A stretch of DNA of 64,000 nt from Laetmonice hystrix (lineage: Eukaryota). Positions within the stretch are counted from its first letter, which is position 1. Each line of letters opens with the position of its first letter. A model generated the notes under the pieces. The model ran no database searches. It worked only from the letters and a program-made list of their open reading frames with translations, and was not told the DNA's origin. Below, piece by piece: positions 1 to 21,054 of this stretch. The DNA is taken from contig OZ249437.1 in NCBI GenBank assembly GCA_965235115.1, positions 42,532,001 through 42,596,000 of the forward strand, given 5' to 3'. A program made the translations under genes and the position numbers.

Positions 1-3000
1 ACACTGACGCTCAGACTACAGGAAGACTACTGTATGTGGACGGCCCATGGCATCCCCACAATAATCGCCCCAGGTTAGTGAAACAATTCTCTACCACTAG
101 TTTGTTTCAATGTTGTAGGATTTCAACTGCAAGACAATTTATCGGCATATGTTCAGTGTTCAGGGCACGAAAGAATATAGCGATATTTTTTTTCTTTTTT
201 TTCAGGGGAGGGGGGAGGTTTCATCTGGGATTGGACATCACAAGAGCAAAATCTTGGGTGTTCCGAAGTATGTGTTATGTCTCAGACAATGACCACCTTT
301 TGGTAGTCGCTGTCAACTAAAGGTAACTGGAGGCCTAAAGTAGGGAGAAATCCTGCGTGTTTGGTTACCTGTCTTTGTCCTTGAACAGGTACCAAAGTCA
401 AAGCACAACACCATTAACTAATACAACTAGAACTCAAGATAAACCAACTGAGTCAACAACTACCCAGGTACATTATAGAATCATATTATTCGGAAAAATA
501 CTTTCATTTTTCTCCAACTTCTGCGCATTAAAAAAAATATGGTGTAATCTTTTAGTTTAAAAATCCTGTGGCTTGATTCTCTTGAAATGGCGTGTTTTTA
601 CCTAAAATTTCAATCTTTTTTGGTGTGTTTTTGTTTGAAGTGTTAGTCCTTGACCTATAAATATGGTGTTTTTTTGAAAAGTCTTATTTTATAAGAGTTT
701 TGTAAGCGTAGCAATTACCCGTCTCTGTCATCTATACCATCGGGACTGGGAAGACAGGTGTAAACAAAAGGACAAAATAACTTTCTCAATCCTCTCAAAT
801 ATCTTTACTGGAGTTAATTAAATGGGGGCTGATCCTAGGCCAGGATAAAGTAGAAAGTTATGGGTCTATAACAGGACCTTTCCAAATGGTACATTGTCAG
901 TTCGGGAGCGTTAAACAAGGGGTCTGACTCGATCCAATATTTTCATTACTTGTCTAATGTGTCAAGGAAAGAGGGGAAGATACTAAGAAGAATGTATGAT
1001 AGAGGGAGATTAATGATGCACTGTTGTCTAGGAGGGGCAGACACATGCAGACTGTGTGTGGATTGATGTGACATCCACCCTCAATATGCTCAAACATGCA
1101 CAAATGCAGTTCGCTCGATGTTGACGTTTCCAGTCGCACACATTGCCGAGGTGGACATGTTGACTGTGTTATGTGAGTGAGTGCACTTCTAGACCTGGAA
1201 CAGTTCGGTGTCTATCACCGTCCGAGTCAGAGTTCTCAGGTAGTAGAAGACCATCGACCTTAGAAATGACATCACGTGGATGTGAGAGTGTTTTATTTAA
1301 TGATAATATCTTCATGCTCAGGCTGATCAAGGCACACACCATGCAGGCATGATGCTCAAGGTAAGATGCGTCTGTCATGTCTGTCTCTCTACTCTCAGTC
1401 CGTCCTGTTATTGGTCAGTTTGAGTACAACATGTAGTTCTCAAAAAGTTTTCGTCAAAACATGATGGTATCAGATCCTTACTTCCTGACAGTCTATCTAT
1501 GACACCTGACAGAATTCCAGACTACAGGTCTACAATAGTATTATCAGAAAGGTTATATGTAATATAAGCTGATCCTAGTTACAGAAAGCTGATCCTAGTT
1601 ACAGAAAGCATTGAACAGGCTAGTTAGTGTAAGTGAGCGATTGCAATGATATTTCTGCAATGTTCATCTGTTGTTCATCCAGGCCCTTTCTTCCTTCACT
1701 AAATAATACACGTTGAGAACTAGATTCTCCTCTACACCTGAAATATCCCCAAACTCTGAAGATAACGAGTAAATAAAGACAAAAAGTAAAGCAAGGCTAG
1801 TCTGTCCAGATCCCAACCCTGAAAGCCATAGGTTTGATGCTCACACGTGAAGCCACCGACTCCTGAGCCTTGGCACTCAATCCTGGCGGGTCGTGGGGGG
1901 GGGGGAGAAAGCCGCCCCCTCCCCCCTCCCCCCCCCCAACACCTCCTCAGACAGTGCGAGAAGGTAGGCCACTGACCGAGCTCTGGGGTCGTCACCCATA
2001 GAGTCGGACTGAACATTGATCATGATGTCCGCGACTATAACTACAGTAGGGTCTCATGTGTGTGGTGTCTATTGTCAACACTAACCTTCTACAGAAACTG
2101 ACGAGATCGTCCATCTACTACTTGAACACACCATTTCAAGAGAATAGTCACACAGACACAGATGTTGAGCTTCTACATCACGGAGAGAGGAGACACAGTG
2201 AGTGCTTGCCGCGAACGCACTCTTCACATTTTACATCGTCCTCATCAAAAAGTACATCTTCAAGTAAGACGCACGCACGCTCAACTGTATCCTATAAAGG
2301 CAGGAGTCTTGTCAGAAAGAAAATGAAGTTTGCTACCGTACCTTTCCCAGTATGACAATATACAAAGGAATCAATTGCAAATCATAGAAGTTTGAAAGTA
2401 AACTGGACATCAGTATACGAGAGTATGTTTTGTTGAGTCGGTGCTTGAAAGCTAATGACTGTATTTCTGCCTAATCGACAGGCTACATGCTTTATACGCA
2501 AACGGTATCGTTTGTTTTGTGTAGAAAGCCTTTCGGCCTTGAGGCTCAAACATGAGATTCATTCACAAGTGTAAAATCGTTGTGAGCATTAACAGTAAAC
2601 ACCAGACCAGCTATACCATTAACACCTTACTGGGCCCGCTTAATATAAACCCATCCTCACGGACATAATCCTTCCACCCTATCTAACATTGTCTAACATT
2701 GTCAAATGTACAAGGCCCCATTGAAAAATCATTTGGATGCCACACTTAACTGTATGGGGTCGGAATGAAGAACCAGCAACAGTCAATCTGGTATCAAGGG
2801 TTGGAGTTTTCAAATATTTAATTAGGAAATAATCACTACTGCTTCGATCAAATTTAGCATGTAAAATTTTACTTTTTCTAAACTTGTATCTTTAGCGGAC
2901 ATTATAACTCACTACTCATGAAAGTACATCTGTACTCGGGCTTAAATTACTTTGACAATATAACTGAGCGGTTTAGCCGTTTAACTGGTCTGGCAGAGAT

Positions 3001-4779
3001 GTGGTGCATTAGAACCTTGCTGTACAATTGAGTGTAAAAATGGTAAAGAAACTAATGGTAATAATAATAATAGCAAGACGACAAGCACGGTTCAGAGTCT
3101 CACAATCCCACGAAACACGCACAGTGCAACTGGTCAGAGTAAAGTAGTGAGCGGAGAAAGAGGCGAACGTCAACAATGTTTATGAACACATGGCTGAGCG
3201 GCACCAACTGGTCCCAGTCACAGCCCCGCTGATGGCCGAGCGGCAAACCTTTTAGTGGTCACAATGAGTTAATTATTTAGTAGAGGTCTCCAGTGGCATA
3301 CAGAATGTCCGATCCGTAAAGTAGGTAATGTTTTATGTTTGTGGCAAAGGGTCATTTTGATCTGCAATTTTGGGTGTGTGCGTTATTTCTGGTTCGTTTC
3401 TTTGACTTCTTGGAGTTGGCACCAGTAATTATAAACATCCATGCACCTGACATCTATAGTCAGTGAGTGTGGTCAGTTATGGCAACCAATCAACCAACCA
3501 ATCAACCAACCAATTAACCAACCAATAACCAGTCAGTTACTACGGTAAAGGGGGCCAGCAAGAGTGACAACAACTCGGCCAAAAAGCTTTCCTTAATGGT
3601 AACAACTTATTAGCCATTCCCAGGAACTGGCACTCGAGCCCACTCATTGTATGAAACAATGCCAAGAAGAAGTAAACATTGTTACCAATACCTAGATGGA
3701 TGGCAGATATATCTGCAGCCTCGCACAAACATTATACATGGAAGTCAACAGTCACCAACTTGGCTTAATTCCGTCAAATTTAAGAATTCATTCTTAAAAG
3801 GTCACCATCTAATTTTAATATAATTAATCCTTACTTATATATGTATAACGATGCCATTCGTATGTATTTTACAGTAATCTTTATAACTTATAGCTTAGAA
3901 TCTTTACAAGGTTTATTATAGTTGATGCCTTAAATTCCACTTGATCGTTTGCTTGTCACCACTGCATGGTTTATCATTTAATCTATCTTTTAAAACAGTC
4001 ACCATTAGAAATTCATTCAACTGTTGCTCGGTTTACACCAAATCTATATTTTCATGCCATACGCTTAGACCTCATCACTGATCACGACGTTAAAAAAGTA
4101 CGTGATAATCATACATTACTCGTCATTTTAACCACCTTTCAAAGCATACAAGTTAAAGAAGTCTTAGTTTAATGCACATTCGCACCGTTAGGGGGATAAC
4201 ATCTCTACACTCGATCAGCGTTAGGTTTGTCTTCATAAAAATTGTTGGCTGCCACTTTCTGCCATGTGGTGGCGCCAGCAGGCTGTCACGTGACCAAGAA
4301 GTGGCAAGTGCAAAGGTCATGGAGATAAAACAGGGACGTGTTCTTTAATCGCAACGCCACAGAACTGGGGGAAACTGATTGAATCAGGGAAGAAAAATCA
4401 CTTCTTTTTTTGGTTATTTTTGTGGGGCATTGACAGGATGAGGATAAGTTAGGATGGATGATAACGGGGAGGTAGGGACTTGAGTAGTAACTCCCATCCC
4501 GACAGTTCGTTTACATAGCCACATGGACTGTCAAATCATATAAATTGATACCAAGCACAACTAAAATATATAGAAGTAGACATCGTGTTATTATTATCAA
4601 TACATTGTCAATTCTAGATCGCCTACAATCTTTAATTAAACATTCCTAAGAGGCCAGCAAAAATTGGGTGTGCATCAGATGACCTTGTACAACATTTGAA
4701 TTTCATTTCCACGACTTTAAATCCAAATTGTGAATGTGTACATTTTCCCCATTACTATATGACGGGTGTTTTGCCTTGT

Positions 4780-5130
4780 TTTATCCAACTGAAACAACAA
4801 GAATTGACAACCTATTGATGATACACCAGTCACTTGTTGTTGGCCACACAGCCATAGAGGTGAAGCCGCGATATTTGTCTCGTTGCGGGAGTACAGAGTA
4901 GGAGGAGTGGGACCTTTTCCATGTCCGAGAGGGCACCAATGGTTGGTGGCGATAGACCTTACGGTAACTCCCAACACGCCACGCCAGCTGAACTACCCAC
5001 ACCTCGGGCATGTCCCATAATGCCTCAGTACTGAGCATGCCTATTATGAGTGCAGCACGGAAATTGTCCTCATTCCAAAGGAAAGGGGCGGGGTAGGAAG
5101 AAATGCTTACGAGACACCCACATGAACCCA
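4780..5130 (-). mobile_element. Decayed 3' fragment of a non-LTR retrotransposon ORF2 (RTE-like C-terminus)
   Basis: Frame 4717-4977 reads ...GHGKG..LYS...AASPLWLCGQQQVTGVSSIGC, resembling the GHG...SPxCxCG..QT..HI...C tail of RTE-type LINEs. Frameshifted; similarity judged by eye only. Confidence 0.35.
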
Positions 5131-5970
5131 CCCTGGCAGTAGGAGCACCTACTGCCAGGGAGGGTTGACCGCTGGAAATCTCTCAGTCCCAGAGGTGAGG
5201 AGGAATGCGCATGCGTCGGCTTGCCCTGCCATCATGATCGAACATGCTCAGACCCAGATGCAACATGGGAGGTCAAAGGTGGTGTCAGCATCCGTCACGC
5301 ATGGCTGAACTCGACCTGTCGCCCTTGCAGGACTTGCCCCTCATCATATTAACTCCACATTATACAAAACGCCAATTCCATAACACTCCCCCAAAATATA
5401 CAACGACCAGATAACAAGAACCAAATCCAAACAAAATCTACGGTGTTGTATTTAGTCTATCTAAGAATCCTCTGGGTAAAAAGGGCCGATTTTCTGCTTG
5501 GGCACTCTACTAGAAACAGTCAAAACCTTTCTTTCATTGGAGCAAATGAAAATAACGGAAAGAAATCCAGGGGGAAAAAGTCCGGACATTCCTTCTAATG
5601 TCCATTTCAGCAGAAAAATATGAAAAGGCCAGATACGTTAGACGTCATTAGTGAGTAAAGCTCTTTAACTAAGACGGGTCTGCCAAATCAAAATCTTCCT
5701 TTTTATCTTGACACCCAAGTTCTCCTAATGACCTATGGACCACTTTCAAATGTGACCAAGACCAAGATGGGAGACACGACTGGAAACTATTTGGGGGCAA
5801 ATCGTGCAGATTTTCAAGTGATTATTATTATTTGTCCCCGATGCCAAAGATAAGTTGCGTTAATAATTTCAAGCCAGACATGGCTTTAGTCTAGTATACA
5901 GCTGTTGTGGAGTGGAGACGAAGACAGGAGACAGTAGTGGGAGAACAAACAAAACTCGGAAGCCTCTCAC

Positions 5971-5979
5971 CTGGACCAG
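5971..5979 (-). CDS. Candidate 9-nt microexon after FN3-2
   Basis: ctgtttttttaactcgcacttacatccatcctacag|CTGGTCCAG|gtgaga. Strong acceptor and donor, phase 1-1, encoding (A)GP. Confidence 0.45.
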
Positions 5980-8099
5980 CTGTAGGATGGATGTAAGTGC
6001 GAGTTAAAAAAACAGTAGAACCTGGGTTATTATCGGTTTTCTTCTTTGTTTTCTCTCTCTCATCAACGACAGGGTGAACACAAACTAATGAAAACTGACA
6101 CCACCAATGAAAACAATCGGCATGACAGTATGTATAATATACATCGATATGTACACATCCATCCAGCACACACGAGAAACCCAATGTAATGTTCACGAAA
6201 AGCTAGGAAAGAAGCTGGTAACTGAAGGAACTTCCACAATGCAATTGAGGATAAAGGTAGGCATTCGACACTGTATTTTGTTTTAATAAAGAAAGGGTTG
6301 TCATAGACTAGCGCCTCCACAGCTCCTCGTCCACCCCTTGTTTTTACCTAGGAACCAACTCAAAAACGCCTTCATGAAATTTTTGGTACCTTTTTTCGTT
6401 CATCTCTTAGTAACATCTTACTCTGTCTGTGGAAATTATGACAACAGTGAACGTATATAAATGTTTACGTATTGTTAATGGAACAAAAAGGCTTCAAAAA
6501 GGAGACCATGCAGTTGTGAGCAGAACTGAGGCAAACGATACTGATACATCTGATAGTAGACCGAGTAAGGATGACCAAGGTCACGAAGGTGGTGAGGAGT
6601 TGGCGGGTTACTTACGGTCAAAAATGCCTATTTCCAACACTGGAAGAGGTTCAATACAGCAAAGGTGCATTAGTATCATCGCTAGCGCAACACTACACCA
6701 GGAAAATCAAACAGGTTAAATGGTTGAAAAAACACAAGTGGGGTGTGCCGTGCCTGTTCTCCTCTCGAGGGCTTCACATGCCCGAACGTTGCCAGCAAAC
6801 AAGATGGACCTCGCAGGTCTCACCATCAGAGAGACCACGGGTGGCAGAGAGAGAATCAGCCAGACCCAAGCCGGTCTACACCTGACGATCCACCTTCCTT
6901 GTTGGCAGACGGCTTCCCATCTCCCGCACTGCCGGGAGACGAGGGTCTTCCTCCTGGTCAACTGCTAGCGTGTTAGTGACCTCATCCTGACCGTAGGAAA
7001 GCTTCCACCTCCAGCGAATTCAACCCAGCGTCTCACCAAGGCTACTCAATGCCAACACGTGTTGGACTTGGACGACTAAACGGTTTGTCCATGTTTATTG
7101 GTTCACTGTCCCCTATACTGTCGTCTGACTGAGCTTGTCGATATGTCGGGCCGACTCGAGGACCCCGCTTTATACCGTTACACACAGTGTTCTCCTATAC
7201 CAACCACCCAGTCAGTGAGTCAGTCAGTGAGGGAGAGAGTCGGTGAGCCGGCCTAGGTTAGGCTTGTTTTGAATTGTTGGACTGGACAGCTTTCACGGGG
7301 ATGAAGAAATACAAGCAGGTCAGCAGAAGGCCAGAGGAAGCGGAGAGACAGGGCAGCGGACACCTCGTTAGGCCCCCCACCTCCACCCCCCGACAGACGT
7401 CCAGGGGGGAGGGGGCGGCAGAAAATTGTACATAAAGTAATGAAAATCAATCCTCAATGAGAGATAGAGAGACTCATAATAAAAACGGGTCCGGAGTCAT
7501 CTCGGAGTCCACAGACTTGGAGGAGGGAGAGAGTACTAAGGATGATCCTAGCAGTTCACTCAGATTTCAGGTGAAACAGACGTTGATGTCTTTGGCTAGT
7601 GAACGGTACCCGCATAGTTTAAACGGTCAACAGGAGAGAGACAAAAACTCGAGAGGGACCGCACACATTGAAGGTACGCCACAGGACAACCTCACGTGTT
7701 GAGGCTGAATGTCACCTGAAACCCTCACAGGACAGGCGCACAATGTCAATCTGACCTGGTCTTTCCTACGTCCTTCAAAAATAACGCAACATTTGCCTAA
7801 GAATTCTGATTAGAAGGGGAATCTAATTCCCACGTACATATATATAAGTTAATCAGAAGATTTAGGCATATGTCACTTATGAACTGTGAGTTCGTATATA
7901 AATCTTGTAAAGGGGAGTTTATCAAAGTGTAACCAATCCATACATAGAGATTGTCACCAGCACAAAGATAGGGGCATGTGTCTAAGGGAGAATATATCAA
8001 ATTTGTTTGCTCGGAATCAAGTTAGCAGAAGTTCAGTGCATCACCTTACAGGAAAGATGTGATTTTGTGCGAGTTCAGAAGGTAGTTAGTTACCTTTAC

Positions 8100-8114
8100 C
8101 TGGGCAAGTTTCGG
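8100..8114 (-). CDS. Candidate 15-nt microexon (21 nt with a second donor, ending at 8094) after FN3-2
   Basis: ggtttctgtcctaactcgatacag|CCGAAACTTGCCCAG|gtaaag|gtaact. Both donors keep phase 1, encoding (A)ETCP or (A)ETCPGK. Confidence 0.4.
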
Positions 8115-9293
8115 CTGTATCGAGTTAGGACAGAAACCATTTATAGTACAGACTATAAATGATATGACTTTAATCAACCTGGTCTGGTATGATGACCGAC
8201 TGGACAGGGAGGACAGGATTACTGAGTGTTGCCTTGTACCCGTGACCCCATTACCACATCATTCCTGTCATTACAATGATACCAAACTTATTCAAACCTG
8301 TACTGTCTAACCGTGTGACCCCTAGTACCACGGTGTGCGTCAGTAAACACACTGTCGTGTATTATTGAGAACTGATATTATTCTGTCTCACCGCACAATA
8401 TATGAACATCTCTAGCATCAACTGTTCACTTGTATCTTACTCGAGAAACTACTCTCAGACAGGTGCTACTAATATACACCGTCATAACGAACCATCAACT
8501 TCCAAGGATATTGATGACTGGTCGGGAAAACTCGAGTATACTTCACAACATTTGGCTCAGAGAGATGTATTTCAAAAGTCGAAACAGGTTCAACAGAAAT
8601 ATATATTTTGATCATTGATAATGATCCCCTTGGAAATCAATGGTTTGTCCTTCATCCTCAAATCTTTCATCACCATCTACATTTCAAGGTCAAGGTCAAA
8701 GGTCAAGGTAAACACTCCACTGCTGTTTCACCATGAATCTGATAATGCGGTGGACTGAGATGTCTCCGGACAAAAATATAGATTCGGACTGAAACGAATG
8801 CTACTGATCATTTCCATACATGGAGTGAGTTATAGAGATCTGTACGTGTGCATGGTACAGCCTACATGTTGGTGCATGGTAAGCTTCACAACCACAATCT
8901 TAACGTCAGCAAACCGTGTCACGTCACAGTAGTATATGCCACAGTTGACATGCCAAAAAACAACGATGATTTTCATGCTTTATTTATACTGGAAAACAAA
9001 TGAAAACTCACTATCCAATAATCCAATAAACACATTTCACGACCGTGAAAACAGCACGCTCCTACTCAACAACAACAGCAACGACCTTCACAACTACACA
9101 GCATGTCAAGGTCACAAAAAGGTCATAAAATGGATTTTGGACGTACATGCAAGAATAAACCTACCATCTATGCTATCTCTACTGCTACTTTTGAAAGTTG
9201 TCATTGATTTGGAACTTTCAGCAAATTTCAGACTTTTTTTGAACAAATTGGGAAAATTGCATGAGAAGAGAATGGCGAAGGTTATGTACGTAC

Positions 9294-9489
9294 CTCCTTG
9301 CTGAGTGCGGACATGAATGGGTTCAGACAATGGGCCATCGCCCACCGAACTGTAGGCCAGAGCACTGATGGTGTATGTCCTGTTGGTGAGCAGGTTGGAG
9401 ATGGTGGTCAGCTGGCTACTGTCTACCTGATGTAACGTCCACAAGGAGATGGGTAGGTCGGGGGTCATGGTGAAGTATACCTTGTAACC
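9294..9489 (-). CDS. Lar: LAR-type receptor PTP coding exon, second part of FN3 domain 2 (196 nt, phase 0-1)
   Basis: Acceptor atttgcag|GGT TAC and donor GGA G|gtacgt. Encodes GYKVYFTMTPDLPISLWTLHQVDSSQLTTISNLLTNRTYTISALAYSSVGDGPLSEPIHVRTQQG. Confidence 0.96.
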
Positions 9490-9971
9490 CTGCAAATAAA
9501 TCGTGGCAAAACATGCAACCCTTTCAGCCAGCCGGACACTAAAACCATCAGCAAATCTTTACGCCCCTATCAACACTACCAGTGGCATTTATTATACTGT
9601 AGAAAGTAATATTCCCTTCAAACAAAGTCTATTCTCTTTCTCTACATGCATGTACTTTGAATAGATGTACATATCAAATATAACTTCCCACAAAGGTTTC
9701 ATCTTGGGAGTCGTCTCTTAAAAAGTAAGGCTGCCATGTCCTGCTCTTGTCTTAGTAAATTTTTCCGTGAACATTTAAATTTTCCTTAAGCGTCTTTATT
9801 TTTTAAATGACAGTATTTATTTCTCAAATATTACTTATACTAATTGCTTCTGTGATTTTCTATGACTGAAACAGGAGATTTCAGTTCCCAGTATGTCACG
9901 TTAACGCCAGTGTTTACGTGACAATAGGTTTCTGAGTGATAAGTAAACTAGAAGTTGACTGTATGACGTAC

Positions 9972-10072
9972 CCGAATAACGCCATTAGGGATTTCGGGCT
10001 CGTTCCATTGGACGACGACCGTACTTGAACTGACCGGCCGTGCTCTCACATCACGTGGAGGACTACCGGGTG
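9972..10072 (-). CDS. Lar: LAR-type receptor PTP coding exon, first part of FN3 domain 2 (101 nt, phase 1-0); absent from the supplied ORF track
   Basis: Translated by hand. Acceptor ccttacag|CA CCC and donor ATT CGG|gtacgt. Encodes (A)[33 protein letters not shown] and joins both neighbouring exons in phase. Confidence 0.95.
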
Positions 10073-11356
10073 CTGTAAGGGACCACGCATTCATCTCCAA
10101 GCTCAAACAACACGGCTAGGAAAACACTACCACCACTTACACAGCCCAACATGGCCCCTCGCAGTACTCGTACTGTCACCATACTCGCACTGGGAGTGGG
10201 CCAAAATGCCATTCGGCCATTCTAGCCAATCACAGCCCCTTTGTTTCTCCATGAACACTCAGAGTGAGAGGGTCACGTGATCGGGAAGGTGAGAGAGAGA
10301 CAAATGGCATTACGTTGGACGACAGCACTTCGCTCACACTTGTTACAACTCTAAGAGTACACTATGACATATAGAGAGGTATATGAAACTTCGAGAACAC
10401 AACATTTATATGGATCATTTTACAGATCTGTAGAGACTAGGAAAGCAGGACTTTGGATGAAAGACATGACAGTTGAGCTTCATTCAAGACGCATCAACTG
10501 AAATCTACGGAGTCGAATCGAGACAAATTACGGTGTCACTTTTCACATAGATGAACTAAACTGTTTCTATGGTCCGAGTGTAACTATATGAGGAGCGTTA
10601 GTACAGGCAAGTAAAGAGACAGGACTAGGAGAGAGATACACAGACTGAGAAGATGACTCGGCAAGCTTGGCTAGAACAGTTTACAGCTCTCACAATCCGT
10701 ACGTAAGGCATTCAGAAAAAGGTTCACAAGAAGCATGGTACACAAAGAATGTATTCTCTGACTAAGCTACACAGAAAGAGCTAGAGCAAGCCGAATGAGC
10801 AGGTTAGTTCGGCATCCACCGCTCAAGGAGTTAGGTCTCCAAACCTCCAACAAATGGAGCTAAGGAGTGCCACATACCCATTTGCATATTAGTGTCAAGG
10901 TCAAGTCAAGGTCAGTTGGGCAAGGGCGTCATTGAAAACCACGAGATGAGATGGTAAGCAATGAAGCTATGCAAGTAGCACGAACACCGTATGTTATGAG
11001 ATAGCACGTTAGTCCACGACGGCTATGAAGTTACTTCTGATTATATGAACGTGTTAGTGAGAATGGTAGTGACACACATAATTTGCATGATACAAACCAA
11101 AAAGAACCCAAAAACTTTATGGTCAACTAACGTACTAAATGCTCACAAAGTGACAGCATACATTTCCCCATGCTTTTGGTTGCATGTTACCACATCATAT
11201 GAACTCCAAATCAAAAGTGATGAAATATATATAATATATATAAGGGCACACACATGACTGGTTTGGACATGATGGACTTGGATAATCTTATGATGTAACA
11301 TGGTGACTTCATTGATTTTTTTTTATAAAGGAGAAGGTGTGAATGGTGATACTAAC

Positions 11357-11644
11357 CCAACTCTCCAGTAGTGACATCTACCGGATTACTTGGGATGCCA
11401 CGGCCAATGTTATTCACTGCAACAACTCGGAACTCGTACACAGTGTATGCATCTAACCCCATTACTGTGTACTCAGTGTTTGTAACATCGGCGATCTCCT
11501 CGTGAGTCGCACCGGGGGTGTATTTACGTTTGTACTGGATGATGTAAGACTCTATGGGATCTAGGTTCCCCGCATTCCAAGTCAGTTTGACAGAAGTAGC
11601 AGTTACATCAGAAATTACTAGACTTGTAGGCGGTTTCGGCAAGG
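11357..11644 (-). CDS. Lar: LAR-type receptor PTP coding exon, fibronectin type III domain 1 (288 nt, phase 1-1)
   Basis: Acceptor tcttttctcactccag|CC TTG and donor TTG G|gttagt. Encodes (A)LPKPPTSLVISDVTATSVKLTW...GLDAYTVYEFRVVAVNNIGRGIPSNPVDVTTGEL. The junction VKVK-A-LPKPP matches the LAR family. Confidence 0.97.
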
Positions 11645-12631
11645 CTGGAGTGAGAAAGAGAGAAAGAAGCCTGATTAGGAACCATTAATTCAATCAAATA
11701 AATTATCATAAAGCAAACTCATTACGTGGAAAAATTAAAACCACAACCGAAATATTCCATTAATGGGAAATCATAGCTTGGCATGCAACTTAATAATTGA
11801 AAAACAATGACCACATCCGTGGCGTCATTGACCCAAACGCCACCTAGTTGTGCCTTCACGTCACAAGCGGTTGCTCTCAGAACTCAATAAATAGAAGAAA
11901 CGTGTCATAATAAATCTGTTGGCATCATAAGCAATATTCAGTGGATGTGGTCATGTCATTTAAATGATAACTGGCATTGTAAAACAATAGCTGCTTTGCT
12001 CCCACTCTGCTGAGTATATAAGTACAAAAGACAATATGACAATTATTACAACAGTATATTACAGTGCATGTACACATTATTATGTGAAGCTTATTGTCTT
12101 GAAATTACCAAGCTTCGCATCAATCAATCAAAGCATTTGCATACGAATTTATATGATTCCAAAACAGTTATCGTTCATACTTAAAGCCTGATTATCCCAT
12201 TAATCTTTTATGAGTACCATGAAAATATTAATAAGAGCAGGCCATTTTTATATGCATTACGAGAACATCAAAGAGAGATAGCTTGCAACTTGACAAACCT
12301 TTCCTGTCTTGTCTATGTGATTACGTTTCTGTTTCTGTATATATCTCGACATTATTCTAATATCTTCAGATAAAATGTGCTGTTGTGAACTGCTATATTA
12401 TATAGGTAGTTGACTGTTACTGTCTTACTGATCTCGGTATCATTCTAGGCCTTGTTATTATATTTGGTTTGTGGCCGCTAGATGTGAAAGCATGCAGGTC
12501 CCTACAGTGCTCGTGAGGGGCGACAAGAAGAAGTGCACTGACGATGTGCAATGAAATCGAAGTGGCTGGAAAGGTAAACATAGTTTAGTACTAACTTTGT
12601 ACTCCTGTTTGGGATGAATGTATTGTTGTAC

Positions 12632-17033: not shown

Positions 17034-17376
17034 CTGCAACACCAACATGACATCTAATTAAAGTCAGTTTGAACCCGGACTGTAATAAAAACAAAAATCA
17101 CGTTATCCCTACACGACCTTTCAAAACGTGTTGGGATTATAATATCACCGAAATTTGTATGAAATGTGCTCACAGGAAAAAGCGAGTTTTGACTAGTTAA
17201 TACCAGTTTCGAAAAAAAAAGGTTTTACGAGTTCTCTATTCATGAACCCTTGCTGTGCGCGACGGTTTTGTGAGTGATAACTACTGCCAACTCAGAATTA
17301 CAATGTGACATTTGAAAACTAAACATTACAACGTGTAGAATACAATGGTCTGCATGAAACAAGTTGTTTTATAGAA

Positions 17377-17643
17377 CCTTTCTGTTCAACACATTGCCTT
17401 TCTGTTCAACACACTGCCTTTCTGTTCAACACATTGCCTTTCTGTTCAACACACTGCCTTTCTGTTCAACACATTGCCTTTCTGTTCAACACACTGCCTT
17501 TCTGTTCAACACATTGCCTTTCTGTTCAACACACTGCCTTTCTGTTCAACACATTGCCTTTCTGTTCAACACACTGCCTTTCTGTTCAACACATTGCCTT
17601 TCTGTTCAACACACTGCCTTTCTGTTCAACACATTGCCTTTCT
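17377..17643. repeat. Minisatellite, 20-bp unit x13, with strict T/C alternation (40-bp higher-order unit)
   Basis: cctttctgttcaacaca(t/c)tg repeated, alternating acattg/acactg throughout. Confidence 0.97.
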
Positions 17644-17866
17644 CGGTAATGTAAACAGATATTCACATACTACGGTAAGCCAAATTATCATCGTGTTGAT
17701 ATTATTAAAGATCGAAAAACAGTTGTAAGTCTGTGATATTATTAAAGTTATAAGTTAAATTTGACAGAAATCTCCTATAATGACATCGCTTTACCCTCAA
17801 TATTAGATTACATTTTCTTCACTTTTTTCTACTCAGCATTTTCACTCTTTTAAAGAAAACGGAAAC

Positions 17867-18083
17867 TAAAGGGCTGAACCCACCAAGGCGATTCCCCTTG
17901 CGACGCCAATGCGATTTTGACATCACCCTTTTATTTTACTGTAAGTTTGAGATTAAAGGATGGAACCCATTTCCTGAAACGGAGAAGGCCAGCCAGGAAA
18001 AATTTCAGAGTGAAATTCCACCATTACATAAAAAATCGCATGGCCGTCGCAAGGGGAATCGCCTTGGTGGGTTCAGCACTTTA
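17867..18083. mobile_element. About 215-bp MITE with about 50-bp imperfect TIRs, in the Ig2a-Ig2b intron
   Basis: aagggctgaacccaccaaggcgattccccttgcgacg..gcgatttt (from 17869) pairs with aaaatcgc..cgtcgcaaggggaatcgccttggtgggttcagcactt (to 18081). TA on both flanks. Confidence 0.85.
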
Positions 18084-18165
18084 GCCTTTATAAGGCAGTA
18101 AGCTAGCTGTCGAGCCTGGTTCTTTCGATTTGTCTTTGATAAAAAAATCAAACTTCCAGAATTAC

Positions 18166-18342
18166 CTGTCTGCAAGAGCTTCAGCCTTGGGTCGGTCAGG
18201 TCGACAGGAATGAAGTCTTTGAGCCACATGATTGTCGGGTCCGGGTTGCCCACTGCCGAACACAGCATCACCGTGTTTCGATCCTTCTCCACTGCCTTCA
18301 AAGTGGGACTCTCGGTGATACGGGGGTATCCACTCGGCATGG
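18166..18342 (-). CDS. Lar: LAR-type receptor PTP coding exon, first part of Ig domain 2 (177 nt, phase 1-1)
   Basis: Acceptor tgttacag|CC ATG and donor ACA G|gtaatt. Encodes (A)MPSGYPRITESPTLKAVEKDRNTVMLCSAVGNPDPTIMWLKDFIPVDLTDPRLKLLQT(G), which matches the LAR/PTPRD/PTPRS Ig2 pattern (PxGxP...LKxVE...MLC...GNPDP...WxKDFxPVD). Confidence 0.96.
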
Positions 18343-18348
18343 CTGTAA

Positions 18349-18662
18349 CACATCAATATGATAACACCATCATCATCACATCCTAGTCACCATCATCACT
18401 ACACTGCCTTCAGACACATCAACATGATAACACCATCATCATCACATCCTAGTCACCATCATCACTACTACTGCCTTCATAGTGGGACACACCAACATGA
18501 TAACATCATCATCATCACATCCTAGTCACCATCATCACTACACTGCCTTCAGACACATCAACATGATAACACCATCATCATCACATCCTAGTCACCATCA
18601 TCACTACTACTGCCTTCATAGTGGGACACACCAACATGATAACATCATCATCACATCCTAGT
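18349..18662. repeat. CAT-rich tandem repeat with two alternating units of about 65-75 bp, abutting the Ig2a acceptor
   Basis: aacatgataacaccatcatcatcacatcctagtcaccatcatcactac(t)actgccttc followed alternately by agacacatc or atagtgggacacacc. Confidence 0.92.
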
Positions 18663-18837
18663 CACCATATACCAATGAGGCCCGGGTGGGGATTTCACCA
18701 TATACCAATGAGGCCCGGGTGGGGATTTCACCATATACCAGTGAGGCCCGGGTGGGGATTTCACGATATATCAGTGAGGCCCGGGTGGGGATTTCACGAT
18801 ATACCAGTGAGGCCCGAGTAGGGATTTCACCATATAC
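18663..18837. repeat. Minisatellite, 33-bp unit x about 5
   Basis: caccatataccaatgaggcccgggtggggattt repeated; explains ORFs 18621-18913. Confidence 0.94.
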
Positions 18838-19811
18838 ATGTCTATTTTATAACAGTCACACCTCCGTTATCACAGAACACCTCCATATAAAGAATACTTT
18901 TTTCTATTCCTAAATGAACACGGAATGAACGAGACATCCGTATATAGGGAATTAAAAGACTTATAACATACCGTATCCATGGGAAAGATTCCCAGGAACT
19001 TGTTGTGTTTGTATGATGATGGAAAGATCCCTTTAATTATACCGTGCCACCCCGAAATGTGTCGCGGATAATGTTCTCCCGAATTCTATAATTACGTTAA
19101 CAACATCCTTTTATAGGAAATGTCTCAAGGACTAGCTACCATTAATATTACCACGGGACATGCATTAACGAAAACAGTAGTCCAAGTAGTCTAAGTCTTT
19201 GAGGAATTTTTTGGTTATGAAGACTGATATGATTTCCGAATTAAGGGAATGATTTAAGAGGGACTCAGGCTTAATTCATGAATCTATAATCTCCTACACA
19301 GGGACAGGAGATTCACTGGCAGGCTTTATTTAATTACACTGCATTTCCTAAATTAATGGCAACACTTCCAACAAATATTGTACAACCGACCTTCAACCAA
19401 ACGAGATGAAAGGGCCTAGTACCGTTGTGTATTGAATTTTACAAATTTAGGCCAACTAGGACTTGAAGTGAACGGCCACATTTGAATAGGGGCCTGATAT
19501 GACTGACTTACTGATATTGTTACTCTTGACAGCTCTATGGGCACGATCTTACAGTAACTGGTCTATATACAGCCCAACCCTTTTATCCGTTTCTCTATGG
19601 TAAACAGTACATATATTTGTCATTTTTGCCGTACATCTCACATGTTTTTTTGGGGGGGGGGACAAAAAGTGCACCGTTTGGCTCAGTATCTGCAACGCTG
19701 CGGCAGTCGATGCTGTCGCCACCACGTGGCTGGAGGCCACAAACCAATCGGTACCGGTGACTCGGCGGGGAAGGCTGGTTAGCTCCGAGTAGGGAGGGCA
19801 TCACAGGATTC

Positions 19812-20205
19812 GGAGGCCGCCTTCCATTGCCCACCCAATGGGGAGGCCACCTTCCATTGCCTACCCAATGGGGAGGCCGCCTTCCATTGCCCACCCAATG
19901 GGGAGGCCACCTTCCATTGCCTACCCAATGGGGAGGGCGCCTCCCATTGCCCACCCAATGGGGAGGCCGCCTTCCATTGCCCACCCAATGGGGAGGCCGC
20001 CTTCCATTGCCCACCCAATGGGGAGGCCGCCTTCCATTGCCCACCCAATCGGGAGGCCGCCTTCCATTGCCCACCCAATCGGGAGGCCGCCTTCCATTGC
20101 CCACCCAATGGGGAGGCCGCCTTCCATTGCCCACCCAATCGGGAGGCCGCCTTCCATTGCCCACCCAATCGGGAGGCCGCCTTCCATTGCCCACCCAATG
20201 GGGCG
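19812..20205. repeat. Minisatellite, 30-bp unit x about 13
   Basis: gggaggccgccttccattgcccacccaat(g/c) repeated; explains the repetitive ORFs in 19595-20284. Confidence 0.96.
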
Positions 20206-21054
20206 GTCTTCCTCCCCTTGCCCACTCAATTTTTTAACAATTCCAACGGACTATAAGAGACACTATCCCAACTATGACAGATGACATATTTTCCTACCTC
20301 GACATCCCCTTCCCAACCCCACCTTGAACCCCCCCCCCCCCACTTCCCACCCCACCACGACCACTACAAGACCGTTTCCTTCTGACACGAATCATCACTC
20401 AACCCCACCTTTCTATGTTCAAGAAGCAAGTGCTTATTTAGTTTGTCCACCAACATGCTATCTTCCATTTACTCACATCATGACGGGTCTCAAAGACAGC
20501 CCGTTTCACCATTAACCAATATATGTGTGTCGGTATGCAGATTAGTAGAGCGGCATGTTTGTCTGAATGGGTTTGTGCCACATCCATTTCCCTGCGTACA
20601 TTACGCGTGACAGGCAGTGTTTTAGTGGCAATAACTTGTGTATGCGTGCCTGAAAATGGCTACAAGGCGGGGAGACTACGCCCGGGGTGTGCTTATGTCA
20701 GTCAGACCGTCGGACCACGCCCACGTCTGGACCTTCTCCACCTATTGTGGTATTCACCGACACCGACATGTCAATCCCCACTCAACCTTCGCCTATCAAT
20801 CTTACAACTGAATACTACCTGTTGTCAAACAATACCCTCCGCTAGCAAAGAAATACTTCAATTCTATAATCGGATTTTCAGTCAATACAAAGGTTACACT
20901 TTGCCAGCTTGAATGTAACCATGGAAAGCATTTACACAATAAATTGCTATTAGAAGTCGAATAAATAGGTCAGAGTTGTACGATATGGCCAACTTTTCTT
21001 CCTCCGATTTATGTTACGGCCATATTAGGTAATATGGTGTACGTATTGCTGTAT

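What the first reader, a model, noticed from the sequence alone, without database searches (positions are those of the whole stretch)
5971..5979. 9-nt microexon candidate (Ala-Gly-Pro) at the FN3-2/FN3-3 junction
Seen: the acceptor tttttttaactcgcacttacatccatcctacag and the near-consensus donor CAG|GTGAGA lie 9 nt apart, phase 1-1, matching the phase-1 end of FN3-2b (TQQG G|). Established: 3-27-nt frame-preserving neural microexons are a bilaterian programme (Srrm2/3/4 eMIC-dependent) enriched in adhesion and synaptic proteins. To my knowledge the characterised LAR-family mini-exons meA and meB lie in Ig2 and the Ig2-Ig3 linker, not here. Inference: a possibly undescribed LAR microexon that adjusts FN2-FN3 geometry.
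Basis: partly seen in the sequence, partly recalled or inferred. Interest (0 to 1): 0.7.

Follow-up and report, generated by a model that had tools for sequence, protein, structure and literature searches.

The report
Conserved 9-base LAR phosphatase microexon
The 9-base segment is very probably a real, optionally used mini-exon of a worm LAR receptor phosphatase gene, one of a pair kept in eight worm genomes and matched by annotated mollusc isoforms, but no RNA of this species yet shows it in use.

Summary
On the minus strand, CTGGTCCAG (5979-5971) lies between a ...cctacag acceptor and a gtgaga donor. It sits in the 9,371-nt intron between LAR exons FN3-2b (ends in phase 1) and FN3-3. FN3-3 starts in phase 1, 78 nt outside the window.

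One genome proves little, but comparison does. Seven other annelid genomes, including Lamellibrachia satsuma and Ridgeia piscesae, keep an AG-9 nt-GT unit ending CCAG|GT in the same intron. About 0.001-0.002 per intron is expected by chance, and synonymous sites there are near saturation.

It measures 21, 24 or 27 nt in the eight genomes and shows synonymous changes.

RefSeq mollusc Lar isoforms carry similar inserts at the same junction. Haliotis has none, APIFD, AGLP and both; Gigantopelta has AGPP.

Assembled transcripts of related worms show only the skipped form. The one RNA-like run of this species does not reach the junction, so inclusion, tissue specificity and eMIC dependence remain untested.

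This is a new splice-insert site for the LAR family and is not described in the papers searched. The scan has noted this same stretch before (s1-334713), not on other DNA.

The parts
5971..5979 (-). Microexon B, 9 nt, CTGGTCCAG, phase 1 to 1. It reads Ala-Gly-Pro after FN3-2b and Pro-Gly-Pro after microexon A.
   Evidence: alignment A3. The length is always 9 nt and the end is always CCAG|GT in 8 annelid genomes. It was seen once in each of 7 foreign introns against 0.001-0.002 expected by chance.
5980..6034 (-). 3' splice region of B. It holds the acceptor AG (5981-5980), a pyrimidine-rich stretch, a TTAAC branch-point-like site and the conserved box CTCGCACTTAC. There is a 40-nt zone without AG.
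   Evidence: The box is invariant in own, L006 and L007 and reads TTGCACATTCA in the siboglinid-type genomes.
5965..5970 (-). 5' splice site of B, gtgaga.
   Evidence: It is GTGAGA in 7 of 8 genomes and GTATGC in L019.
6616..6639 (-). Microexon A, 24 nt, phase 1 to 1, encoding VLEIGIFD.
   Evidence: alignment A4. It is 21, 24 or 27 nt in 8 genomes and the peptide ends GIFD or GIFK. Synonymous changes occur (GGC/GGA, ATT/ATA, TTT/TTC, GAC/GAT). Its donor is gtaagt in all.
6640..6694 (-). 3' splice region of A, with branch point tactaat, UGC motifs at -30 and -22, and a 40-nt zone without AG.
   Evidence: A CTAAY site is present in 7 of 8 genomes and a UGC within 30 nt of the acceptor in 7 of 8.
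5980..6615 (-). The 636-nt intron between A and B. It is part of the only long alignable block of the big intron.
   Evidence: Own 6720-5903 matches L006 at 73% over 855 nt, while most of the rest of the intron does not align.
9294..9489 (-). Constitutive exon FN3-2b, which ends ...TQQG in phase 1 with donor gtacgt.
   Evidence: An RNA contig joins 9972 to 9489.
9972..10072 (-). Constitutive exon FN3-2a.
1..5970 (-). The remainder of the intron downstream of B. The FN3-3 exon follows 78 nt beyond window base 1 (G000:C2:42531922-42531635).

Best explanation
The 9-nt segment is a genuine, alternatively spliced coding microexon (B) of an annelid LAR-type receptor tyrosine phosphatase gene. It is the downstream member of a tandem pair with a 24-nt microexon (A, window 6639-6616). 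Both lie in the intron that separates the second and third fibronectin-III domains. Both are in phase 1, so four in-frame forms are possible at the FN2-FN3 linker: no insert (TQQG|VPEQP), +B (AGP), +A (VLEIGIFD, with the next Val read as Leu), and +A+B (VLEIGIFDPGP). The first residue of B depends on the upstream exon because that codon is split. The default form skips both exons. Inclusion is presumably restricted to certain cells, possibly neurons. It would lengthen an inter-domain linker and so change the reach, flexibility or binding surface of the ectodomain. Shown here: the sequence, the phases, the conservation, the coding-type substitution pattern of A, similar inserts in mollusc models, and the skipped form in related worms. 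Inferred: inclusion in this species, its tissue pattern, its regulator, and its effect on the protein.
For: The gene is LAR-type. Ig and FN3 exons lie in the window, further FN3 exons and two phosphatase domains lie downstream, and the nearest named proteins are Lar. B keeps AG, exactly 9 nt and CCAG|GT in own, L006, L007/L008, L009, L011, L019, Lamellibrachia satsuma (L021) and Ridgeia piscesae (L022). It always lies after A and before FN3-3. Each foreign intron holds one such pattern against 0.001-0.002 expected. Third-codon identity of the flanking exons is only 0.37-0.60. Between own and L007 the two microexon islands are the only alignable parts of the intron. A varies in length only by whole codons and mostly by synonymous changes. 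Mollusc RefSeq isoforms carry inserts at the same junction. Haliotis has none, APIFD, AGLP (or VGPT) and APIFD+AGLP. Gigantopelta has none and AGPP. Octopus has none, ES and VPVNKPVIFDQS, where the E/Q switch fits a split phase-1 codon. An AlphaFold model of the Haliotis FN2-insert-FN3 region gives two confident FN3 domains and an unstructured, low-confidence insert between them.
Against: No read or contig shows B, or A, spliced into mRNA in this species. The one RNA-like run has low coverage, its contig ends at 9306, 12 nt before the FN3-2b donor at 9293, and nothing covers 5900-7257. The full-length transcript-derived proteins of related worms (P0209, P0210, P0332) and the gene models of Ridgeia, Lamellibrachia, Capitella, Owenia and Hirudo all read QQG|VP with no insert. 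The first two residues of B vary freely, and the invariant CCA also serves the 5' splice site, so B itself shows no coding-type substitution pattern. A and B were not found in L018 or L010, and L012 could not be assessed. Homology to the mollusc inserts rests on very short motifs (IFD, AGP), and mollusc genomic DNA could not be fetched.
Confidence: 0.8

Rival explanations
1. It is a conserved intronic splicing-control element: a decoy or pseudo-exon that binds U2AF and U1 and tunes the use of microexon A or removal of the long intron, but is not itself translated.
For: The first two codons of B are not conserved (AGP, VSP, VGP, VNP, VEP, DKP). The constant part, CCAG|GTGAGA, is itself a splice signal. 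No RNA shows inclusion.
Against: The length is exactly 9 nt in eight genomes, while the surrounding intron varies from 0.6 to 2.9 kb on the A side and 2.4 to 6.0 kb on the FN3-3 side. Mollusc protein models carry AGPP, AGLP or VGPT at the same junction, with and without the A-like insert.
Confidence: 0.1
2. It is a chance pairing of an AG and a GT in a long intron and has no function.
For: The intron holds 33 AG-N9-GT pairs, and a second one has a GTRAG donor (7704-7696).
Against: The same pattern recurs at the corresponding place in seven other genomes whose introns are otherwise unalignable. Chance expectation is 0.001-0.002 per intron.
Confidence: 0.02
3. It is a recursive-splicing exon used only as a stepping stone for removing the 9.4-kb intron.
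For: The intron is long, the acceptor has a long zone without AG, and a strong donor follows immediately.
Against: Joining FN3-2b (...GGAG) to B (CTGG, CCGG, TCAG, TCGG, TGAA, TTGA or ATAA) does not regenerate a GT 5' splice site in any genome. In L009 the corresponding introns are only 0.5-2.4 kb long.
Confidence: 0.03
4. The conserved box belongs to a feature on the opposite strand, where GTAAGTGCGAG reads as a donor-like site, or to a small RNA gene.
For: The plus strand reads GGATG|GTAAGTGCGAG.
Against: The box is kept only in the closest genomes and is absent in L009 and L019, whereas the minus-strand AG-9-GT is kept in all. Rfam finds nothing in 5500-7000 even at E up to 1.
Confidence: 0.01

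Closest known systems
Vertebrate LAR-RPTP mini-exons meA-meD, especially meA, which is built from two tandem micro-exons giving meA3, meA6 and meA9
   Same: The gene family is the same. These are also very short, frame-preserving optional exons in the ectodomain. Like meA, two neighbouring micro-exons can give several insert variants (PMC8711739).
   Different: The site differs. meA is in Ig2, meB lies between Ig2 and Ig3, meC is in FN5 and meD is near D1. None lies at FN2/FN3. More than 100 fish PTPRF isoforms and the frog PTPRS isoforms read QQG|VP with no insert. No ligand is known for the worm insert.
Inserts at the FN2|FN3 junction in RefSeq Lar isoforms of molluscs (Haliotis, Gigantopelta, Octopus, Liolophura)
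   Same: The junction and the phase logic are the same. There is an IFD-containing first insert and a short Gly/Pro-rich second insert (AGLP, VGPT, AGPP against the worm AGP). All four combinations are annotated in Haliotis.
   Different: The second insert is 12 nt (6 nt in Octopus) where the worms have 9 nt, and the first is 15-30 nt. The resemblance rests on 3-residue motifs. These are automatic models, not a described feature, and their genomic exons were not inspected here.
eMIC (Srrm2/3/4)-dependent neuronal microexons
   Same: The size is 3-27 nt, the frame is preserved and the host is a synaptic adhesion receptor. Microexon A has the cis-pattern reported for fly eMIC exons: a long zone without AG, UGC near the acceptor and a strong CUAAY branch point (PMC8797185).
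   Different: In this lineage microexon B has no UGC near its acceptor (CGCAC where siboglinids have UGCAC). Neural restriction and dependence on the factor are untested.
Recursive-splicing exons in long introns
   Same: It is a small exon-like unit deep in a long intron with a strong donor.
   Different: No 5' splice site is rebuilt at the junction.

Membership tests
Frame-preserving alternative cassette microexon (3-27 nt) | Length of 3-27 nt, a multiple of three, and open in the frame set by the flanking exons | tested here: met
   B is 9 nt and both neighbouring exons are in phase 1, so it reads AGP.
Frame-preserving alternative cassette microexon (3-27 nt) | Usable acceptor and donor, conserved with the exon length across species | tested here: met
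   AG, 9 nt and CCAG|GT are kept in 8 annelid genomes against a chance expectation of 0.001-0.002 per intron.
Frame-preserving alternative cassette microexon (3-27 nt) | Both the included and the skipped form are seen in mRNA | tested here: inconclusive
   The skipped form is seen in transcript-derived proteins of related worms (P0209, P0210, P0332). Inclusion is not seen. The RNA-like run of this species does not reach the junction.
LAR-type receptor tyrosine phosphatase (host gene) | Three Ig domains, a run of FN3 domains, a transmembrane segment and two phosphatase domains | tested here: met
   Ig and FN3 exons lie in the window, and more FN3 exons plus two PTP domains lie downstream. The best named matches are Lar/PTPRF.
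Vertebrate mini-exons meA-meD | Insertion at one of the four described sites (Ig2, Ig2-Ig3 linker, FN5, juxtamembrane) | tested here: not met
   The site here is the FN2-FN3 linker; the vertebrate sites are taken from PMC8711739.
eMIC (Srrm2/3/4)-dependent neuronal microexon | UGC motif close to the 3' splice site | tested here: not met
   For B there is none within 55 nt in own, L006, L007, L009 and L019, and it is present only in the siboglinid-type genomes. For the partner exon A it is met in 7 of 8 genomes.
eMIC (Srrm2/3/4)-dependent neuronal microexon | Long AG-exclusion zone and a strong branch point | tested here: inconclusive
   The AG-free zone is at least 36 nt in all genomes, but the branch-point-like site of B is only TTAAY. 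Exon A has CTAAY in 7 of 8 genomes.
eMIC (Srrm2/3/4)-dependent neuronal microexon | Inclusion restricted to neurons and dependent on the factor | not testable with these tools
   No tissue-resolved RNA is available. The genome has one SRRM_C (PF15230) match of 29.9 bits against a cut-off of 27, which shows only that such a protein may be encoded.
Recursive-splicing exon | A 5' splice site is regenerated when the upstream exon is joined to it | tested here: not met
   GGAG joined to CTGG (or the other starts) gives no GT in any of the 8 genomes.

The most novel reading that the evidence does not exclude
The FN2-FN3 intron of lophotrochozoan LAR genes carries an ancient two-microexon splice-insert code, an IFD-type exon plus a Gly/Pro exon giving four variants. 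It is shared by annelids and molluscs, is absent from arthropods and vertebrates, and arose independently of the vertebrate meA/meB code. It selects ligands or sets ectodomain geometry in particular neurons.
Probability: 0.45. Interest if true: 0.6.

Novelty: new member of a known kind. Interest (0 to 1): 0.5.

Why it matters
In vertebrates, LAR-family phosphatases are central organisers of synapses, and their tiny optional exons decide which partners they bind. A second combinatorial insert site, in a different part of the ectodomain, appears to be kept across annelids and probably molluscs. If so, splice-insert coding of this receptor is older and more varied than the vertebrate meA/meB picture suggests. 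It also gives a concrete pair of exons to test in tractable worms or molluscs. In practical terms, gene models of annelid LAR genes currently omit both exons.

Tried and rejected
1. RNA evidence. Only four runs from one study hold the stretch, and one of them (X4) looks like RNA. Laying X4 and X1 on 5900-11700 confirmed the FN3-2a to FN3-2b joint. However, the RNA contig stops at 9306 and nothing covers either microexon, so the result says nothing either way. The 6,000-letter limit also prevented spanning FN3-2b to FN3-3 in one stretch.

2. A metagenome scan with the pattern TCGCACTTAC-gap-CCAGGTGAGA gave five hits with no similarity in the flanks. These are chance matches.

3. The search of protein representatives with the FN3-3 exon was swamped by giant multi-FN3 proteins and gave only a few usable LAR sequences.

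4. A full-text search for the assembly accessions behind L007 and L008 found nothing, so the closest relatives remain unnamed.

5. Rfam found nothing in 5500-7000.

6. No A or B equivalent was found in L018 (3.0-kb intron) or in L010 (0.67-kb intron, next to retroelement genes, a divergent copy). In L012 the upstream exon was not within reach.

A Haliotis isoform was modelled in its place.

8. The plus-strand donor reading and the recursive-splicing reading were considered and rejected.

Full report
**The observation**

The candidate lies on the minus strand. One search shows tttttttaactcgcacttacatccatcctacag, then CTGGTCCAG at 5979-5971, then gtgagagg. The host is a LAR-type receptor tyrosine phosphatase gene. 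Ig and FN3 exons are visible in the window. Further FN3 exons and two phosphatase domains follow in the DNA downstream, fetched from the same chromosome. The nearest named proteins are Lar/PTPRF.

The upstream exon FN3-2b is 9489-9294 and ends ...CAG CAA GGA G|gtacgt, in phase 1. The next constitutive exon, FN3-3, is not in the window. It starts 78 nt beyond base 1 (L002:9922) with ...ccttgcag|TG CCG GAA, also in phase 1. The direct junction reads TQQG|VPEQP, exactly as in transcript-derived proteins of related worms. Inclusion of the 9-mer would insert Ala-Gly-Pro.

**Is it more than chance?**

Within one genome the evidence is thin. The 9,371-nt intron has 33 AG-N9-GT pairs, two of them with a GTRAG donor. 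I ran a blind scan for segments of 3-27 nt that are a multiple of three, open in phase 1, and have a pyrimidine-rich YAG acceptor and a GTRAG donor. It returned only two sites: this one and a 24-nt segment at 6639-6616.

**Comparison with other genomes**

Using the FN3-3 exon as a probe, I fetched the orthologous region from other assemblies.

- Between this genome and L007/L008 (91% identical in the exon), the only alignable parts of the whole intron are two islands of about 90-100 nt. One is centred on the 9-mer and the other on the 24-mer.
- With the closest genome, L006, the whole block 6720-5903 aligns at 73%, while most of the intron does not.

The 9-nt unit is present in eight genomes. 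In each it lies between the 24-mer equivalent and FN3-3, is exactly 9 nt long, follows an AG and ends CCAG|GT:

| Genome | Sequence | Peptide after FN3-2b |
|---|---|---|
| own | CTGGTCCAG | AGP |
| L006 | CCGGTCCAG | AGP (synonymous change) |
| L007/L008 | TCAGCCCAG | VSP |
| L009 | TCGGTCCAG | VGP |
| L019 | TCAGTCCAG | VSP |
| L011 | TGAATCCAG | VNP |
| Lamellibrachia satsuma | TTGAACCAG | VEP |
| Ridgeia piscesae | ATAAACCAG | DKP |

A ninth, truncated contig (L020) starts right at aag|GTCTTCCAG|gtgagg. The pattern is expected 0.001-0.002 times per foreign intron and is found once in each of seven. Third-codon identity of the flanking exons is 0.60 for L006 and 0.37-0.46 for the others. 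Neutral sequence is therefore close to saturation, and this unit has been held by selection.

**A partner microexon**

The second island is a better-behaved exon than the first. In this genome it reads tactaatgcacctttgctgtattgaacctcttccag | 24 nt | gtaagtaac at 6639-6616. In phase 1 it encodes VLEIGIFD.

In the other genomes it is 21, 24 or 27 nt, always whole codons. The peptides are VLDIGIFD, VLGIGIFD, VLETEGIFD, VIKIGIFK, ATKGIFD, VLKGIFD and VLRGIFD. The last four codons differ mostly at synonymous positions (GGC/GGA, ATT/ATA, TTT/TTC, GAC/GAT). This is the signature of a translated exon.

I call it A and the 9-mer B. Because all phases are 1, four in-frame products are possible. The first residue of B changes with its upstream neighbour: G+CT gives Ala after FN3-2b, and C+CT gives Pro after A.

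**Evidence from annotated proteins**

Of 115 LAR proteins retrieved around this junction, 111 read QQG|VP with no insert. These include arthropods, vertebrates, Capitella and Hirudo. The four exceptions are lophotrochozoans, and their cluster members show alternative forms:

- Haliotis species: no insert, APIFD, AGLP (or VGPT), and APIFD+AGLP.
- Gigantopelta: no insert, and AGPP.
- Octopus: no insert, ES, and VPVNKPVIFDQS. The Glu/Gln switch is what a split phase-1 codon predicts.
- Liolophura: no insert, GMSRLYP, and DDSAKA.
- Lineus: a 13-residue insert in all listed isoforms.

An IFD-type insert followed by a short Gly/Pro insert, each used independently, matches the worm A and B. I take this as probable homology. 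The caveats are that the motifs are very short and that I could not inspect the mollusc genomic exons.

**RNA in this species**

Only one study holds this stretch, and one of its runs (X4) behaves like RNA. Its contigs confirm the FN3-2a to FN3-2b splice. However, the contig ends at 9306, 12 nt before the donor at 9293, and nothing covers either microexon. Full-length transcript-derived proteins of related worms (P0209, P0210, P0332) skip both exons, as do the gene models of Ridgeia and Lamellibrachia. Skipping is therefore the common form, and inclusion in annelids remains unproven.

**Regulation**

Fly eMIC-dependent exons have long zones without AG, UGC near the acceptor and strong CUAAY branch points (PMC8797185).

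- Exon A fits. It has CTAAY in 7 of 8 genomes, UGC within 30 nt of the acceptor in 7 of 8, and an AG-free zone of at least 37 nt.
- Exon B has the long AG-free zone but only TTAAY. In this lineage its conserved box reads CGCAC, where siboglinids have UGCAC.
- The genome has one SRRM_C match just over the cut-off.

Neural, eMIC-type control is therefore plausible for A, weaker for B, and untested for both.

**Effect on the protein**

A model of the Haliotis FN2-APIFDAGLP-FN3 region has a mean pLDDT of 88. It gives two confident FN3 domains with the insert as an unstructured, low-confidence stretch between them. That fits a linker extension, but few aligned sequences carry the insert, so the low confidence is weak evidence.

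**Comparison with what is known**

Vertebrate LAR-family mini-exons lie in Ig2 (meA, itself two tandem micro-exons), between Ig2 and Ig3 (meB), in FN5 (meC) and near D1 (meD) (PMC8711739). A targeted RNA-seq study of mouse LAR-RPTPs mentions no site at FN2/FN3 in the passages I read (PMC10883964). I found no paper describing the lophotrochozoan site.

The finding is thus a new member of a known kind. It is a real, conserved splice-insert site of the LAR family at a new position, already present in automatic mollusc models but not characterised.

**Rivals**

- A conserved untranslated decoy exon is the main alternative, at about 0.1. B's first two codons drift, and its constant part doubles as a splice signal.
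- Chance is excluded by the conservation.
- Recursive splicing is excluded because no 5' splice site is rebuilt at the junction.
- The opposite-strand reading is excluded because the plus-strand donor-like box is not kept in the more distant genomes and Rfam finds nothing.

Noticed in passing
window 6616-6639 (minus strand): There is a second conserved microexon of 24 nt (VLEIGIFD), 636 nt upstream of the 9-nt one. It has a textbook branch point, two UGC motifs and a gtaagt donor, measures 21, 24 or 27 nt in eight annelid genomes, and shows synonymous changes.
   Followed up: yes
window 10074 and 11646 (minus-strand acceptors of FN3-2a and FN3-1): In the RNA-like run X4 the same 27 letters from the end of the Ig3 exon (..VAQVKVK) are joined both to the start of FN3-1 and directly to the start of FN3-2a. 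This suggests an in-frame isoform that skips the whole first FN3 domain.
   Followed up: partly
window 11306-11351: The X4 contig that covers FN3-1 runs on into the downstream intron, with a 1-nt and a 2-nt deletion relative to the assembly. This points to unspliced RNA or intron retention, with allelic indels.
   Followed up: no
window 7451-7596 and 8179-8321: Two short unspliced RNA-run contigs lie inside the big intron. They could be pre-mRNA, repeats or separate transcripts.
   Followed up: no
window 8094-8114: The other first-stage microexon candidate in this intron (s1-334761) was not returned by my blind splice-signal scan and lies outside every block conserved with L006 or L007.
   Followed up: partly
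L010:1726-2874: This is a divergent copy of the FN3-2b and FN3-3 exons with only a 0.67-kb intron and no microexons. It lies next to reverse-transcriptase and integrase genes, so it may be a paralogue or a decaying copy in another worm.
   Followed up: no
G000:C18:20459758-20459838 (L023): A single SRRM_C (PF15230) match of 29.9 bits lies just over the cut-off. It is a candidate exon for the C-terminal eMIC-type region of an Srrm2/3/4 homologue.
   Followed up: no
window 17364-20284: Long tandem-repeat tracts give repetitive open frames on both strands between the Ig exons.
   Followed up: no
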